In this document: positions 15,418-63,138 of the stretch, in pieces | Numbering within the stretch: the first letter of the stretch is position 1 | Layout: the number at the start of each line of letters is the position of its first letter | Assembly: GCF_046119375.1 (NCBI RefSeq) | Contig: NW_027362764.1 | Location: forward strand, 734,142,001-734,206,000 | Direction of reading: 5' to 3' | From: Phyllobates terribilis | Taxonomy: Eukaryota | DNA: 64,000 nt | Made by a program: the position numbers and the translations under genes | The notes under the pieces: model-generated | Databases searched by the model: none | What the model saw: the letters and a program-made list of their open reading frames with translations, nothing else | What the model was told of the DNA's origin: nothing

Positions 15418-17870
15418 CAGGGGTGGATTAAGAGTAGCCAGGGCCCCGGGCAGTTTAGAAGGCATGCCCCCACCCCCCCGGTACCTGATGTATCACGTGA
15501 CATGTCACATGATCCCCCTTTGATAAATCATGTGATAGTTCATGTGAGTAACGTACAGCTGCTCTAGTGCAGATCTGTAAACGGAAAGACAAATAGCGGC
15601 ACGCTGAGCCCTATATAGCTTCCTATATACAGTATGAGTACCACGTAGCCTCCCATATACAGTAGGAGCTCCACGCAGCCATATATATACACAGCATGAT
15701 GCCGCACGTAGCTCCCCATGTACACCATGAGGATGCACAGTGCTCCCCAGATAAAGCATGAGGAAGCACGTAGCTCCCCAGATACAGCATGAGTCCGCAC
15801 GTAGCTCCCCAGATACAGCATGAGGCCGCACGGCACTCCCCAGATACAGCATGAGGCCCCACGGCGCTCCCCAGATACAGCATGAGGCCGCACGTAGCTC
15901 CCCAGATACAGCATGAGGCCGCACGGCACTCCCCAGATACAGCATGAGGCCCCACGGCGCTCCCCAGATACAGCATGAGGCCGCACGTAGCTCCCCAGAT
16001 ACAGCATGAGTCCGCACGTAGCTCCCCAGATACAGCATGAGTCCGCAGGGCGCTCCCCAGGTACAGCATGAGGCCGCACGGCGCTCCCCAGGTACAGCAT
16101 GAGGCCGCACGGCGCTCCCCAGGTACAGCATGAGGCCGCACGGCGCTCCCCAGGTACAGCATGAGGCCGCACGGCGCTCCCCAGATACAGCATGAGGCCG
16201 CACGTAGATCCCCATGTATAGCATGAGGCCGCACGTAGCTCCCAAGATACAGCATGAGGCCGCACGTAGCTCCCAAGATACAGCATGAGGCCGCAAAGCG
16301 CTCCCCAGAAACAGCATGAGGCCGCACGGCGCTCCCCAGATACAGCATGAGGCCCCACGGCGCTCCCCAGATACAGCATGAGGCCCCACGGCGCTCCCCA
16401 GATACAGCATGAGGCCGCACGGCGCTCCCCATATACAGCATGAGGCCCCACGGCGCTCCCCAGATACAGCATGAGACCCCACGGCGCTCCCCAGATACAG
16501 CATGAGGCCCCACGGCGCTCCCCAGATACAGCATGAGGCCGCACAGCGCTCCCCAGATACAGCATGAGGCCGCACAGCGCTCCCCAGATACAGCATGAGG
16601 CCGCACAGCGCTCCCCAGATACAGCATGAGGCCGCACGGTGCTCCCCAGATACAGCATGAGGCCGCACGGCACTCCACATGTACAGCATGAGGCCGCACG
16701 GCGCTCCCCAGATACAGCATGAGGCGGCACGTAGATCCCCATGTATAGCATGAGGCTGCACGTAGCTCCCCAGATACAGCATGAGGCCGCAAAGCGCTCC
16801 CCAGAAACAGCATGAGGCCGCACGGCACTCCCCATGTACAGCATGAGGCCGCACGTAGATCCCCATGTATAGCATGAGGCCGCACGTAGCTCCCCAGATA
16901 CAGCATGAGGCCGCACAGCGCTCCCCAGATACAGCATGAGGCCGTACGGCGCTCCCCAGATACAGCATGAGGCTGCACGGCGCTCCCCAGATACAGCATG
17001 AGGCCGCACGGCACTCCCCATGTACAGCATGAGGCCGCACGGCGCTCCCCAGATACAGCATGAGGCCGCACGTAGATCCCCATGTATAGCATGAGGCCGC
17101 ACGTAGCTCCCCAGATACAGCATGAGGCCGCACGGCACACCCTATGTACAGCATAAGGCAGCACTGTGCTCCCTATATACAGTATGAGGCAGCACGTAGC
17201 TCCCTATATACAGTATGACACTGCATACAGTCACAAACACACGCAGTCATGCACACACACAGTCATGAACATGCAGTCACGCACATGCAGTAATGTATAC
17301 ACATGCAGACTTGCACGTATACGGGTCACAGAAATGTGCACACACACACAAACATATACAAAGGCACATATAGGCACAAACACATTTGAAAAACGAAAAT
17401 ACATATAAACAGACATATCACACATACATAGATAACACAATGATATCTTAACACACAGACACACTGTGTCACACACACATGCGCACGCACGCGTACGACA
17501 CTCACTATCCCCCTGCACGGCTCCCGTCATCCAGCTCCTCTGCGGTAGTAAGTAGCAGTGCAGGGCACACTGCGTGACGTTACGTTAGCAGACATGGCCA
17601 CGCACAGGGCCGTGTCTCCAGCTGTGACATGGCCGGGCCAGCACACAAGCAAAATTACAGGTGCAGTGCAAGCCCAGCCGAAGAAGAAGCAGGGGCCCTG
17701 CGCAGCTGCTGGGGGAGCGGCCCGGGGACCCTCCGGCTCAGCCCGCCCCTTCCTGCCGGAATATGTGTGCCGCATTAGCGCCGCACACATTATAATGAGG
17801 GCAATCTGGCCATGGGCCCCCCGGAGCCTCGGGCGGTAGCCCAGATTGCCCTCATTATAATCCGCCTATG
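15418..17870. mobile_element. Non-autonomous hAT-like element (2.45 kb) carrying a minisatellite
   Basis: Imperfect TIR CAGGGGTGGATTAA / ATAATCCGCCTATG. 8-bp TSD CATGTCAG (15410-15417) / CATGCCAG (17871-17878). No transposase. Confidence 0.75.
15628..17215. repeat. 31-bp GC-rich minisatellite, about 50 copies
   Basis: Unit TACAGCATGAGGCCGCACGGCGCTCCCCAGA with variant units. It produces 31-aa periodic ORFs in all three minus frames. Confidence 0.97.
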
Positions 17871-50566: not shown

Positions 50567-50727
50567 ACAGCCCCGGCACGAGTGATGTGCACAGCCCCGG
50601 CACGGGTGAGGTGCACAGCCCCGGCACAAGTGAGGTGCGCAGCCCCGGCACAAGTGAGGTGCGCAGCCCCGGCACAAGTGAGGTGCGCAGCCCCGGCACA
50701 AGTGAGGTGCGCAGCCACGGCACAAGT
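50567..50727. repeat. 24-bp minisatellite x ~7
   Basis: Unit GCAGCCCCGGCACAAGTGAGGTGC. Related degenerate units recur at about 51078-51120. Confidence 0.92.
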
Positions 50728-50803
50728 CATGAGCCCAGTCCCAAGAAAGACTTGGCACTCGCTTCTTTACATAGATTGAAATATTTTATTGTTCATAGAA
50801 ATT

Positions 50804-50850
50804 CCAGATTCAAAACGTTTCGGTCAGTAAGACCTTCATCAGTCATCTGA
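50804..50850 (-). ncRNA. Minimal type I hammerhead ribozyme motif
   Basis: UCAGAUGA-CUGAUGA-A-GGUC-uuacu-GACC-GAAA-CGU-U-UUGAAUCUGG. Intact core, 4-bp stem II, palindromic ACGU stem III, bulged stem I. Confidence 0.75.
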
Positions 50851-50919
50851 TGACAAGTGTCTGAGCAGTGGATACTGCAGACACCTTTCCAGTGCTACCT
50901 GCTGCAGTGTAATCAACTC

Positions 50920-50966
50920 CCAGATGACTGATGAAGGTTTTACTGACCGAAACGTTTTGAATCTGG
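50920..50966 (+). ncRNA. Minimal type I hammerhead ribozyme motif
   Basis: CCAGAUGA-CUGAUGA-A-GGUU-uuacu-GACC-GAAA-CGU-U-UUGAAUCUGG. Core at 50928-50934, GAAA at 50949-50952. Stem II retained through a U-G wobble. Confidence 0.75.
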
Positions 50967-53367
50967 AATTTCTATGAACAAAAAAATATTTCAATCTATG
51001 TAAAGAAGCGAGTGCCAAGTCTTTTTTGTACTGTTTAAAGGATTGGGGTCCTACTTGTGCAGTGTTTGTTATCATAATGAGCACAGTCCCAGCATAAGTC
51101 ATGAGCACAGTCCCGGCACAAATGATCAGTAACTGCACCATTTACTCAGTATAGTTGCTACACCTGTTTTCAATAGTCACACCAGTGACCAACAGTCACA
51201 GAAGTAATCAGCAGTTGCACCTGGATCAGTGAATGTGTACCCTTGGCTACTGGACCCTATACCAGCCCCTATGCCTAGTAGCTAAACTCATGTCTATAAT
51301 TTTCCATTAAGAACAGAGCCTGCCTTCGAGGAGCTGCAATATGTTTTGGCAGCAGTAGTGCATCATGCAGTGCTATTCTCGTTATCAAAGTTACGTAAAC
51401 CATTACAGAACCCCAATGGACCAAATTTTATTGTGTTCAGTTGGGTGCCATTTGGATCCATTATATAATGGCTCCATAACAGGGTTGTGGTTTCCATTGT
51501 GAATAAAAGCCATGATACAGGATTGAACATTAGCTGGCCATAGACATGAGATATCTATCTGCAGATCATTTGAAGAGCCATCCTCTTTTAGAAGCATCTG
51601 ATGTTAATCTTATGTTTATAGCAATCACATAAATCTGACCAAATATTAACTGGATCTGTCAAGTGGTAAAATATCTGAAGTCCATAGCCTGCTTCACTAC
51701 TCTGCCTCTTTAGGTCTCTTACTTTATGCATTGCTATCAGCTCTATAGATCTGGCATTACAGGATGAACAATAAACTAGAAAAAAAGAACGGCAATGGAC
51801 GTGTTAACCATGGGGTCCTCCTAGAATCACTGATCGGTGCTCTGTACAGATGACATGAGATTATGCAGGACTATTTAATGTCTTCATGAAATGCAACATT
51901 CATTATCAGGAGACATTTCCTTTGATCTGAACTGGGAATTTATGAATTGTGATAAAACGGACCTCCAAGAGACGAAGGTCATCCATGGTGATGGCACAAA
52001 TATTATATATCGATATATACAATATACATATATTCTGAGTCCATTCTACATAACCACATACAATATCTGAGCACTTTATCTTCTCCTACAGTGAATAATC
52101 AAATAATATTTTAAATCCGCTAACTCCGAGAGAGGCGACAGTATGACCATTAATCATAGTGCCGTAGTCTAACTCATCATGGACTGGTAACTCCAATTTA
52201 TAGGTCGATAAGTCTTGACTAAGCCCCGTTCTCCTGTGTCAGCACATCTGCAAACTGCTGCGGGTCCGTTTATAAATTATCTACAGAGGCAATGCTATAT
52301 CCCTTTTATACACGGCGCCCACATACACGACTGCTCATGTGGTGAACACGGCATAATAAAGAGATGATGTATGGGAGTTTGCATTAACTCTTAGATAGAA
52401 GAAAAAGATGAGGAACCATCGGTTTTGCCAATAGGTCTGTAAGTATATTTAGATTCCCCATGATATATCGATTCTGGGGCGTCTTTTCACAGAACTCAAA
52501 ATCAAAAAATATTAAATTATTTAACCAAATTAAATAAATGCTGTAAAAATATATATTTAAACACCAAAATTGTAATAAAAAATTTTCAAAACATGTTATG
52601 CCTTTCCAAATGGTACCATTAAAAACTAAAGCTCGGCAGGTAAAAATAAAACCTTATGCATGTTTATAGGACTTTTTTTTTTTTTTTTTACATTTTTCAA
52701 GCAGAAGATGCTATAAAAAACTTTTTCCTGAAAAGTCTTTTGAGTCGCTTTTTTTTTTGGTCGCTTACTGAACGTTTTTCAGACGGTTTTGGTCGCCATA
52801 AGTTTTTTGGAGGCTATTACAAACTCATTTTTACTGTCGTTTTCATTGAATAATGAAGAAACAGCTAGCGTTTTTTTTTAAGCAAAAACAATGGCAAAAT
52901 GATCCAAATAACACTTCTTTCGGATGTCTTTTCAACTTTACAATATGAATGAAAGTGAATGGTTAAGTATAGAGCATCTTCCGAGCATGAAACACAAGAA
53001 TAGTCAGGTCATTTCTTTTAACCGATTTTCATTTTTAGAAAGCTGAAGAGACGTTCAAAAGCCTGAAAATATGAAGTTGTTTTTACATAGAAACGCTTAT
53101 GTTTATTATTTTGAGCATTTTCTGATAGTTTTTTCAGACAGTTTCCGTAGCAGAATCCACCTGAACAAGACGTCGAGTGCATATAGCCGTACGCAGCTCC
53201 ATCGAGGGGAGAAAACAAAACAAAAAAAACATAGGTCTCATAAAATGGCAACACAAACAATAATGAAACATACAAGTCTGGAAATGCAGTCATCATACTG
53301 ACCTAGGTCATTTTTACCGCTCAGTCAACACGGTAAAAACAAAACTCAAAAAGCAATGGAATCCAAG

Positions 53368-61327: not shown

Positions 61328-61594
61328 AGTTCTCTGAATGCTGAGCTCTGTATAAATGAAAGTGAAGTCAATTTATGTCATAAAGAGCATTGGTGATGAC
61401 TCCAGGACTGGACACCAGAGGCCCACACTCAGGACCTTTTACTTGGAGCACCAAATATCTCAGTGCCTGTGAATGCCACTTGGTATCTGCATCCTTGCTT
61501 TTAACCAATACTCAAAGTTACATTATGGGTATATCCCATGCACCATTCCGTATCCAGTTGAAATTTGGTACAGCCCCTCCACTGGGTTGTAGAA

Positions 61595-61851
61595 ACTACA
61601 CATAATCCAAGGATCCAAGGCACCGGATATTCTCCTTCCAAAAAGATTTTTTATTGACACCAGTATAGACACAGCAAAAACAGTAATGTTTCGGCCATGC
61701 GGAGCCTTTATCATGCACTTTTTTTCTTGGCTTGATAAAGGTCCTGCGTGGCCGAAACATTGCTATTTTTCCTGTGTGTACACTGGTATAAATAAAAAAT
61801 CTTTTTGGAAGGAGAATACCCGATGCTTTGGATCCTTGGGGTACGTGTAGT
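61595..61851. mobile_element. Penelope-like fold-back unit with two divergent hammerhead-like motifs (U3-A8 core)
   Basis: ~120-bp inverted arms (CCAAGGATCCAAGGCACCGG... / ...CGATGCTTTGGATCCTTGG) with a ~16-bp spacer. AATAAA lies downstream of each motif. Confidence 0.7.
61728..61765 (+). ncRNA. Hammerhead-like motif with compensated U3-A8 core
   Basis: UGGC-UUGAUAA-A-GGUC-cugcgu-GGCC-GAAA-CAU-U-GCUA. 4-bp stems I and II. Stem III is ACAU (non-palindromic, likely decayed from ACGU). Confidence 0.55.
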
Positions 61852-63138
61852 ACCCAAAGTTACGTTAGCAATCAAAGAGTCTTGAAACACCCTCATAGGC
61901 CTATAAAGAAAATGATGATGGAAAAGAGAAAGAAGAAAGAAAAGGAGTACAAAGAGGAGGAGGAAGAAAAGAAACCAAAATTATATATTAAAAAATACTG
62001 GAGTTTGAAAAGTTGAATAGCTTTTTTTCCCCATTCGCTTTGTTAGCTTAGATCAGTCAGTGCTCTGGTTACAAAATTTAAGCATTATCAATACCAAATT
62101 ACAGCCGCTGAAAAGCAAAATCCCTTTTTATTCTCTAAACCACATCAGTAGTCAATTTACTGACTAAAACTGTTTCTTTATCTGTCAAATCATCAAAAAC
62201 TTTTAGAGTGGGTGTCTGCATCACACGTAAATGGATCTCTAATCACCAGGTATTTACCAGTCCGTCACTCAAATATGACTGAAGATCTTTTTACGCTCTT
62301 CAGCTGCCCATTGTATACAATGCCTATGTCAAAGCCGAGCCCGAGTCAAGTCATATAAAGCACCTTCTCCTGTAGTTCGTAAGTTCCTTTCGTATACAAA
62401 CTTACAATTAAAAAAAATAATACTGATTCCTAGGTGGGACAATTTCTGTACCATTTTGGCTTCATTCATAAAGAATCTATTAGAAAAAACTTTAAAGTAG
62501 TATGTGCATCATACGCTAGAATCGTTACGAGACTGCCAACAAGCCACTCAGCCTTGTCTAGGGTACTTAGATCCAGGGAATGGCAGCAAATTAAATCTTT
62601 GCCATTGGTAAGCGAAGGTCAACCCACAGTATAAATAAAATTGGAGCACTAGGAAATACATTCAGACCTCATAAAAGTCTACAGGTGGCGTATAAGAGCT
62701 CCACACAACTCCGTTTGATGAAGGTACCGTGGTTTACAAAACCTATTTTCAAATACTCTATTAACCCTATTAAGAATTTCGGAGTTAATTCAAGTCCCCT
62801 GTTCAGAACCCTTATTTGATTAGTCAGAAAAGAGTTCAGTAACAAAGAGCCCCATTCTTTAAAGGATCCGTCATGTGTGATCAAAATGACAGCCGGTTGA
62901 TTTCCAGAAAAACAGTGACCACTTAGATCACACCTAACTCCTTGTTGAGGAACCATTCATAATTAGAGGCTATATGTAGTTAGGTGCTACATGTCCATGG
63001 ACTATGGATCATCTGGCTTCTCTTCCAGAATCTAAACCTAATACATTTCGTCAGTCAATCACTCAGCATTTTATAAAACTCCTCTTATCGTATGGGAAAT
63101 CAGAAAGATAGAATGCACATTCTCCTTGAGGCTATTAA

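What the first reader, a model, noticed from the sequence alone, without database searches (positions are those of the whole stretch)
61595..61851. Hammerhead-like fold-back with a compensated U3-A8 catalytic core
Seen: the right arm reads UUGAUAA instead of CUGAUGA, so positions 3 and 8 both change, while stem I, stem II and GAAA are retained. The left arm is an inverted copy (AUGAUAA). Known: C3-G8 is a Watson-Crick tertiary pair in the active hammerhead fold, and U3-A8 is a tolerated compensatory variant. Inference: the double change suggests the ancestral family was selected for cleavage, and standard CUGANGA pattern searches would miss it. Stem III here is ACAU, so this particular copy is probably dead.
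Basis: partly seen in the sequence, partly recalled or inferred. Interest (0 to 1): 0.7.

Follow-up and report, generated by a model that had tools for sequence, protein, structure and literature searches.

The report
Dead Penelope-type fold-back with variant hammerhead
This is an old, decayed 325-bp insertion of a frog Penelope-type retroposon, made of two head-to-head copies that each carry the small U3-A8 form of the hammerhead ribozyme motif; this ribozyme form was described in 2014, so the finding is real but ordinary.

Summary
The region 61595-61851 is a 122-nt-armed inverted repeat. Its right arm reads UUGAUAA-A-GGUC(loop)GGCC-GAAA-CAUU on the + strand, and its left arm carries the mirrored AUGAUAA copy on the - strand.

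It is not chance and not a MITE.
- My minimal-hammerhead descriptor found no hit in 100 shuffled windows.
- The element runs 61526-61850, with a 69-nt one-sided tail.
- It is flanked by a 17-bp target duplication matching 15/17.

Contigs from public DNA runs of this frog and a second organism show hundreds of relatives.
- No alternative letter at position 3 or 8 is among the differences displayed.
- Stem II position 10.3 is C in about 85% of relatives, which restores a C-G pair.
- Stem III reads ACGU in about half of relatives.

All of this matches the minimal hammerhead of Penelope-like elements (Cervera & de la Peña 2014). That paper describes the bulged base after A9, the G10.1-C11.1 pair, the palindromic 15.2/16.2, the U3-A8 covariant and pairs on opposite strands. 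The layout also matches the known Penelope insertion structure: inverted 5'-truncated copies with a tail at one end.

This copy is dead. Stem III is ACAU in both arms, the left arm has A3·A8, and the arms differ by 14.8%.

The scan has noted this kind of element before on other DNA of the same genome. Interest is low.

The parts
61509..61525 (.). Left copy of the 17-bp target-site duplication (TACTCAAAGTTACATTA)
   Evidence: Direct repeat with 61851-61867, 15/17 identical; both differences are transitions. Family contigs begin right after it, at 61527.
61526..61594 (-). One-sided 69-nt tail: the 3' extension of the minus-sense copy, with no counterpart on the right arm
   Evidence: Contigs of relatives from three DNA runs align continuously from 61527 across 61595 into the left arm (table 8). 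A tail at only one end is a published Penelope-like-element trait. A 5-bp stem-loop (UGUAG-UUU-CUACA in sense) sits at the arm/tail boundary.
61595..61716 (-). Left arm: a 5'-truncated copy in minus sense (hammerhead module plus about 90 nt)
   Evidence: Inverted repeat. Against the right arm it has 18 mismatches in 122 (13 transitions, 5 transversions, no gaps).
61685..61714 (-). Left hammerhead-like core, broken: A3 opposite A8, U at 10.4, ACAU stem III
   Evidence: Read. It fails the descriptor.
61717..61729 (.). 13-nt T-rich spacer at the head-to-head junction
   Evidence: In one search (table 7), loose ends show other family copies joined head-to-head at the same GC just 5' of the core.
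61730..61850 (+). Right arm: a 5'-truncated copy in plus sense, ending 89 nt after the predicted cleavage site
   Evidence: In an Anolis Penelope element the reverse-transcription start lies about 85-92 nt downstream of the hammerhead cut site.
61732..61761 (+). Right hammerhead-like core: U3-A8, bulged A after A9, G10.1-C11.1, 4-bp stem II, GAAA and U17 all present; stem III is ACAU (not palindromic)
61851..61867. Right copy of the 17-bp target-site duplication (TACCCAAAGTTACGTTA)
   Evidence: The flanks beyond it are single-copy (depth 7.7 in run X1 against up to about 2,700 inside the element).

Best explanation
The element at 61526-61850 is one old, non-coding insertion made by the retrotransposition machinery of a Penelope-like element (PLE) in a poison-frog genome.

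Structure. Two 5'-truncated DNA copies of the same short RNA module lie head-to-head between a 17-bp target duplication. Each copy is a minimal hammerhead at its 5' end followed by about 90 nt. One copy carries an extra 69-nt tail. That layout gives the 257-bp fold-back.

The hammerhead-like core. It is the PLE-type minimal hammerhead in its U3-A8 form. In the parent RNA this motif is thought to act as a dimer through a palindromic ACGU helix III, assisted by the element's protein, to process multimeric transcripts. This step is inferred from the literature and was not tested here.

State of this copy. It is a relic. Both arms read ACAU, the left arm has A3 opposite A8, and stem II carries C-to-T decay. 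In any read-through transcript the core would be locked in a -162 kcal/mol hairpin. No present function is expected.

Shown here: the anatomy, the target duplication, family membership and the family letters. Inferred: priming on both DNA strands as the origin of the inversion, and the ribozyme's role.
For: Anatomy
- Inverted repeat. Target duplication matching 15/17 and abutting the right arm.
- Family contigs start at 61527, exactly inside the left duplication. The flanks are single-copy.
- The arms differ by 14.8% and the target duplication by 11.8%. This fits two copies that were identical at insertion.

Motif
- The descriptor gave 0 hits in 100 shuffles.

Family
- 279, 201 and 174 contigs from three DNA runs lie on the stretch.
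- U3 and A8 show no displayed variant. Position 10.3 is C in about 85%. Position 16.2 is G in about 50%.
- CpG sites show symmetric decay.

Architecture in the literature
- An inverted 5'-truncated copy next to the element, a tail at only one end, and a bias for insertion into microsatellites.
- The PLE protein nicks and extends both DNA strands, starts reverse transcription internally about 85-92 nt past the hammerhead cut site, and leaves an optional tail.

Independent link to PLEs
- Loci L031 and L060 carry the same divergent fold-back arrangement.
- Among well-paired cores, U3 accompanies A8 in 5 of 9 cases, against 2 of 53 for G8 (Fisher p = 3.6e-4). The inner stem II pairs covary.
Against: - No PLE ORF with this tail was found in the window. 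The link of this frog family to an autonomous PLE therefore rests on motif, architecture and unchecked scan notes.
- The tail is 69 nt, against the 30-40 bp reported for other PLEs.
- Rfam gives no hammerhead hit. It also misses the canonical-core motifs of the neighbouring fold-back, so that blank says little.
- Loose ends show other copies joined head-to-head at the same GC. The fold-back could therefore be inherited rather than made anew at each insertion.
- The table of differences left 47 weaker rows undisplayed, so minor variants at positions 3 and 8 cannot be excluded.
- No cleavage was tested.
Confidence: 0.8

Rival explanations
1. The whole fold-back is itself the propagating non-autonomous unit (an ORF-less miniature with inverted pseudo-LTRs, copied as one piece), rather than being created by two-strand priming at this insertion.
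For: (table 7): contigs from the run labelled RNA show another copy with the reverse-complemented core (GGGCCTTTATCAA) joined to the T-rich leader at the same GC as here. The asymmetry is the same. Earlier scan notes list many such fold-backs in this genome (unchecked).
Against: - Most family contigs diverge just upstream of the core (61721/61728) into heterogeneous sequence. Their consensus agreement is only about 0.5, rather than the reverse-complemented core expected for inherited fold-backs.
- Arm divergence (14.8%) is about equal to target-duplication divergence (11.8%), as expected if the arms were identical at insertion.
- A reproducible junction can also arise if the template RNA has a fixed 5' end.
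Confidence: 0.12
2. A cut-and-paste MITE whose resemblance to a hammerhead core is coincidental.
For: It is a near-perfect hairpin. Only generic miRNA-precursor models match it in Rfam, all below their gathering scores.
Against: - The 17-bp target duplication is longer than the 2-10 bp of the cut-and-paste superfamilies (from general knowledge).
- The inverted repeat is not terminal on the left, because the 69-nt tail belongs to the family.
- The descriptor gave 0 hits in 100 shuffles.
- The core is the best-conserved and most abundant part of the family.
- The same core module sits in an unrelated fold-back 11 kb away.
Confidence: 0.03
3. A dispersed monomer of an amphibian non-LTR retrozyme / satellite-2-type repeat, which produces circular RNAs.
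For: Such repeats are abundant in this genome according to scan notes. A 2026 preprint argues that animal retrozymes derive from PLE pseudo-LTRs. One contig from organism B shows a 46-nt back-step around the core.
Against: There is no tandem arrangement here. The motif is the minimal type, with no helix III loop and no loop-loop contacts, unlike the canonical type I motif of retrozymes. The unit is inverted rather than head-to-tail.
Confidence: 0.03
4. This very copy is still functional, either as a self-cleaving RNA or as a hairpin source of small RNAs taken over by the host.
For: In the right arm, U3-A8, G12-A14, stem I and stem II are all intact. The long hairpin resembles miRNA/siRNA precursors.
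Against: - ACAU cannot form the dimer helix III: it would leave two C·A mismatches.
- The hairpin sequesters the core.
- None of the 8 contigs from the RNA-labelled run is 95% alike or more to this locus.
- The arms decay at the same rate as the target duplication.
Confidence: 0.02

Closest known systems
Minimal hammerhead ribozymes (min-HHR) of Penelope-like elements, U3-A8 covariant (Cervera & de la Peña 2014, PMC4209133)
   Same: Shared features: core boxes, an unpaired nucleotide between A9 and 10.1, the G10.1-C11.1 pair, a short helix I, no helix III loop, ACGU-type palindromic 15.2/16.2 in the family, U3-A8 in place of C3-G8, occurrence as pairs on opposite strands, and thousands of dispersed copies in amphibians.
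   Different: This copy has lost the 15.2/16.2 palindrome (ACAU). Its left twin has A3 opposite A8. The link of this frog family to an RT/GIY-YIG ORF was not shown here.
Penelope-like element insertion architecture (Craig et al. 2021, PMC8557442; Frangieh et al. 2024, PMC11167929)
   Same: Heavy 5' truncation, an inverted 5'-truncated copy forming an inverted repeat, a tail at only one end, and a 3' end about 89 nt past the hammerhead cut site (85-92 nt in the Anolis element).
   Different: The tail is 69 nt, against 30-40 bp. No ORF is present at all. The element is only 325 bp.
Second fold-back in the same window, 50742-51028
   Same: Same layout: divergent cores at the inner edge of each arm, and a one-sided extension of about 63 nt. 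The core module aligns.
   Different: Its core is canonical C3-G8 with ACGU. Its arms are 97% complementary, so it is younger. It has a 71-nt spacer and no similarity to this element outside the core. It sits inside a 24-bp minisatellite.
Amphibian non-LTR retrozymes / newt satellite 2
   Same: A hammerhead that works as a dimer, and a probable Penelope relationship.
   Different: Those are head-to-tail tandem units with canonical type I motifs and circular RNAs. This element is an inverted pair of minimal motifs.

Membership tests
PLE minimal hammerhead (min-HHR) | Conserved core boxes N3-U-G-A-N-N8-A ... G-A-A-A, with positions 3 and 8 able to pair (C-G or U-A) | tested here: met
   Right arm: UUGAUAA ... 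GAAA with U3-A8. Left arm: A3 opposite A8, so not met there.
PLE minimal hammerhead (min-HHR) | Unpaired nucleotide between position 9 and 10.1 | tested here: met
   The A at 61739 is present in both arms and in both arms of the 50742-51028 fold-back. The feature is listed.
PLE minimal hammerhead (min-HHR) | G10.1-C11.1 closing pair and a helix II of at least 4 bp | tested here: met
   GGUC/GGCC with one U-G pair. The family has C at 61742 in about 85% of depth.
PLE minimal hammerhead (min-HHR) | Palindromic 15.2/16.2 (ACGU-type helix III for dimer formation) | tested here: not met
   This copy reads ACAU in both arms. Relatives have G at 61759 in about 50% of DNA depth, and in all four contigs covering it in the RNA-labelled run. 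The feature therefore holds for part of the family but not for this copy.
PLE minimal hammerhead (min-HHR) | Cleavage-site nucleotide 17 is not G, and helix I of 4-5 bp | tested here: met
   U17 at 61761. UGGC/GCUA is predicted in the arm folded alone.
PLE minimal hammerhead (min-HHR) | Self-cleavage of dimeric RNA | not testable with these tools
   Needs transcription and cleavage assays. Published min-HHRs cleave weakly.
Penelope-like element (insertion product) | Sequence shared with an element encoding RT plus GIY-YIG endonuclease | not testable with these tools
   There is no such ORF in the window and the rest of the genome is not searchable here. An analogous U3-A8 core lies next to an RT + GIY-YIG ORF in L006.
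Penelope-like element (insertion product) | Inverted 5'-truncated copy, a tail at one end only, and a target duplication | tested here: met
   against the descriptions. The tail length (69 nt) is longer than published.
Rfam hammerhead families | Match to a curated covariance model | tested here: not met
   No hammerhead model matched at E up to 10. The control shows the same blank for the canonical-core motifs at 50814-50956, so the models do not cover this minimal class.
Cut-and-paste MITE | Terminal inverted repeats at both ends and a short fixed-length target duplication | tested here: not met
   The left end is a 69-nt non-inverted tail, and the duplication is 17 bp.
Non-LTR retrozyme | Head-to-tail tandem units with a canonical type I hammerhead | tested here: not met
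   There is no direct repeat of the unit, and the motif lacks a helix III loop.

The most novel reading that the evidence does not exclude
About half of the relatives carry A at 16.2 (ACAU), and no matching excess of U at 15.2 was displayed. The other CpGs of the core decay symmetrically. If this reflects a sublineage that kept transposing with a broken helix III palindrome, then hammerhead dimer cleavage would be dispensable for Penelope-type retrotransposition in vivo. That would extend the in-vitro result of Frangieh et al. 2024.
Probability: 0.15. Interest if true: 0.45.

Novelty: new member of a known kind. Interest (0 to 1): 0.15.

Why it matters
It matters little on its own. The element is a clean, dated example of a Penelope-type fold-back insertion carrying the U3-A8 minimal hammerhead. 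It shows that ordinary CUGANGA searches and Rfam models undercount these motifs in amphibian genomes.

It has two practical uses. First, such fold-backs should be annotated as Penelope-derived rather than as MITEs or miRNA-like hairpins. Second, the apparent ACAU sublineage offers a cheap genomic test of whether ribozyme integrity is needed for transposition.

Tried and rejected
- Rfam at E up to 10 on the element gave only generic miRNA hairpin models, all below gathering score. The same search on the neighbouring canonical-core fold-back also gave no hammerhead. I therefore dropped Rfam as a test.
- blastn of both fold-backs against the window found no further copies.
- ORF and Pfam scans of the window found no reverse transcriptase or other informative domain.
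- A look-up of earlier scan notes by sequence returned nothing.
- A PDB sequence search of the L006 ORF returned nothing.
- Dimer cofolding of the natural arms did not separate this element from the 50742-51028 fold-back in a useful way, because stem II swapping dominates the prediction.
- I rejected the MITE, retrozyme and live-ribozyme readings for the reasons given under the rival explanations.
- I built no family consensus. Only per-position letters reported by the reads tool are used.

Full report
**What is there**

The stretch is an inverted repeat with arms 61595-61716 and 61730-61851. The arms are 122 nt, 85% complementary, and separated by a 13-nt T-rich spacer. As RNA it folds into a single hairpin of -162 kcal/mol, z = -20.6.

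On the + strand the right arm reads as follows.
- U3 U4 G5 A6 U7 A8 A9 at 61732-61738.
- An extra A at 61739.
- Stem II GGUC/GGCC at 61740-61743 / 61750-61753, around a 6-nt loop.
- G12 A13 A14 at 61754-61756.
- A15.1 C15.2 A16.2 U16.1 at 61757-61760.
- U17 at 61761.

The left arm carries the mirror image on the - strand. There position 3 is A, giving AUGAUAA, and stem III is again ACAU. Folded on its own, the right arm forms stem I (UGGC/GCUA) and stem II around an open core.

**More than chance**

I wrote a descriptor from the published features of minimal hammerheads. It requires:
- positions 3 and 8 as C-G or U-A;
- an optional bulge after A9;
- helix II of 4-8 bp closed by G-C;
- GAAA;
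- U16.1;
- a nucleotide other than G at position 17.

In 64 kb on both strands it finds only three sites. Two are the cores of a second fold-back at 50742-51028. The third is the right arm of this element, and only when the 15.2/16.2 palindrome is not required. One hundred shuffled windows gave no hit.

Rfam gave no hammerhead match at E up to 10. It also misses the canonical CUGAUGA cores of the second fold-back, so that blank is uninformative for this minimal class.

**True limits and nature of the element**

- A 17-nt direct repeat, 61509-61525 and 61851-61867, matches 15/17, and both differences are transitions. It abuts the right arm but lies 69 nt left of the left arm.
- Contigs of public DNA runs of the same organism (X1, X5) and of a second organism (X9) were laid at 80% likeness or more. 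They begin at 61527 and run across 61595 into the left arm. The flanks have single-copy depth: 7.7 in X1, against 1,350-2,720 over 61722-61789.
- The element is therefore 61526-61850, 325 bp. It consists of a fold-back plus a one-sided 69-nt tail, between a 17-bp target duplication.
- From general knowledge, that duplication is longer than the 2-10 bp typical of cut-and-paste transposons, and one end is not an inverted repeat. That excludes a MITE and points to target-primed reverse transcription.
- The arms differ at 18 of 122 positions (13 transitions, 5 transversions, no gaps). That 14.8% is close to the 11.8% of the target duplication, as expected if both arms were identical when inserted.
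- The insertion is old. It is also present in a second individual, with identical contigs on both flanks in X5.

**The family**

laid 279, 201 and 174 contigs from three DNA runs. The core and its proximal 70 nt are the most abundant part.

| Place | Position in motif | This copy | Family contigs |
|---|---|---|---|
| 61742 | 10.3 | T | C in about 85%, restoring a C-G pair in stem II |
| 61759 | 16.2 | A | G in about 50% of DNA depth, and in all four covering contigs of the RNA-labelled run X13 (ACGU) |
| 61747/48 and 61753/54 | CpG sites | CG | symmetric decay, 17-26% |
| 61736 | N7 | T | variable (C in about 22%) |
| 61732 and 61737 | 3 and 8 | T and A | no alternative letter among the 40 displayed differences |

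Each displayed difference reaches about 17% or more in some run. Another 47 weaker differences were not displayed. The family therefore keeps U3 and A8.

I did not build a consensus. These are per-position letters reported by the tool.

**Comparison with the literature**

Cervera & de la Peña 2014 describe minimal hammerheads in the pseudo-LTRs of Penelope-like elements. Their description includes:
- the G10.1-C11.1 pair;
- a short helix I;
- a palindromic 15.2/16.2 for dimer formation;
- a natural U3-A8 covariant, with about 1,300 hits in Schistosoma;
- pairs on opposite strands 100-700 bp apart;
- about 9,000 motifs in Xenopus tropicalis.

Craig et al. 2021 describe the insertion structure. 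It shows strong 5' truncation, an inverted 5'-truncated copy adjacent at the 5' end that forms inverted repeats, a tail often at only one end, and a bias for microsatellites.

Frangieh et al. 2024 studied an Anolis element.
- Its protein nicks and extends both DNA strands.
- It starts reverse transcription internally, about 85-92 nt downstream of the hammerhead cut site.
- It leaves an optional tail between two start sites.
- It inserts equally well with hammerhead mutants.
- The ribozyme there needs the protein to cleave.

In this element the right arm ends 89 nt after U17, and the other copy carries the tail. The match is close, except that the tail is 69 nt rather than 30-40.

**Independent evidence gathered here**

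A pattern scan of metagenome contigs returned 123 cores of this build, from what looks like host DNA in host-associated samples.
- The two inner stem II pairs are formed in 81% and 70% of 102 distinct cores. Shuffled partners give 44% and 42%, with maxima of 60% and 58% in 500 shuffles. Six pair types occur.
- Among cores with both pairs formed, U3 accompanies A8 in 5 of 9 cases, but G8 in only 2 of 53 (Fisher p = 3.6e-4).
- In L006 a U3-A8 core with ACGU lies about 520 nt upstream, on the same strand, of a 909-aa ORF. [quoted passage not shown]
- L031 and L060 carry divergent core pairs inside 141-nt and 93-nt inverted repeats, the same layout as here.

**How it most likely works**

In the parent RNA the motif would pair with a second copy through ACGU to form an extended helix III. 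It would then cleave after position 17, probably assisted by the element's protein. This is inferred from the literature.

The fold-back most likely arose when both nicked target strands primed cDNA synthesis on the same short RNA and the two products were joined head-to-head. This is also inferred.

An alternative is that the fold-back is inherited as a unit. Loose ends show another copy joined at the same GC just upstream of the core.

This copy itself is inert.
- ACAU leaves two C·A mismatches in the dimer helix.
- The left core has A3 opposite A8.
- Any read-through RNA would lock the core in the hairpin.
- The 8 contigs from the RNA-labelled run come from other copies. None is 95% alike or more.

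**Verdict**

However, this is a known ribozyme variant in a known kind of retroelement insertion. Earlier notes of this scan record many such fold-backs, with 14-17-bp duplications and U3-A8 cores, elsewhere in the same genome. One follow-up note led me to the 2014 paper, which I then read myself. Novelty is limited to a new family member in a poison frog. The only open point of interest is whether an ACAU sublineage kept transposing.

Noticed in passing
window 50742-51091 (fold-back 50742-51028; cores 50928-50956 + and 50842-50814 -): A second, younger fold-back of the same class. Its arms are 108 nt and 97% complementary, with a 71-nt spacer. Its cores are canonical C3-G8 with the bulged A and ACGU, and both pass the descriptor. 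It has a one-sided extension of about 63 nt on the right. It sits inside a 24-bp minisatellite (50568-50727), which fits the published microsatellite bias of Penelope-like elements. The flanking repeat units make its target duplication ambiguous.
   Followed up: partly
Read-laying run X13, record 12: A 4,103-nt contig of depth 250, from a run guessed to be RNA, contains a relative of the core in head-to-head arrangement with ACGU and U3-A8. Some family member may therefore lie inside an abundant transcript. It is not this locus.
   Followed up: no
window 61758-61759 versus family: Relatives split about 50:50 between G and A at 16.2, with no displayed C>T at 15.2. The other CpGs of the core decay symmetrically. 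This suggests a sublineage that spread with ACAU.
   Followed up: no
L006:8238-11515 (-): An apparently intact Penelope-like element ORF of 909 aa (RVT_1 plus C-terminal GIY-YIG). It is preceded by a U3-A8 minimal hammerhead and a long run of a 6-nt repeat (CCCTAG units). It lies in a eukaryotic contig of the metagenome collection, next to a homeodomain ORF.
   Followed up: partly
window 15505-17164 (-): Three overlapping ORFs of 513-549 aa, in all three frames of one strand, in a G+C-rich (59%), strongly AT-skewed block. Pfam finds nothing meaningful. This is probably a low-complexity repeat rather than a gene.
   Followed up: no
window 61669-61777: The inner part of the hairpin matches the Rfam mir-942 model letter for letter over UGUUUCGGCCAUG / the reverse strand (33 bits, against a gathering score of 100). 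It is below threshold and is probably a generic hairpin match.
   Followed up: no
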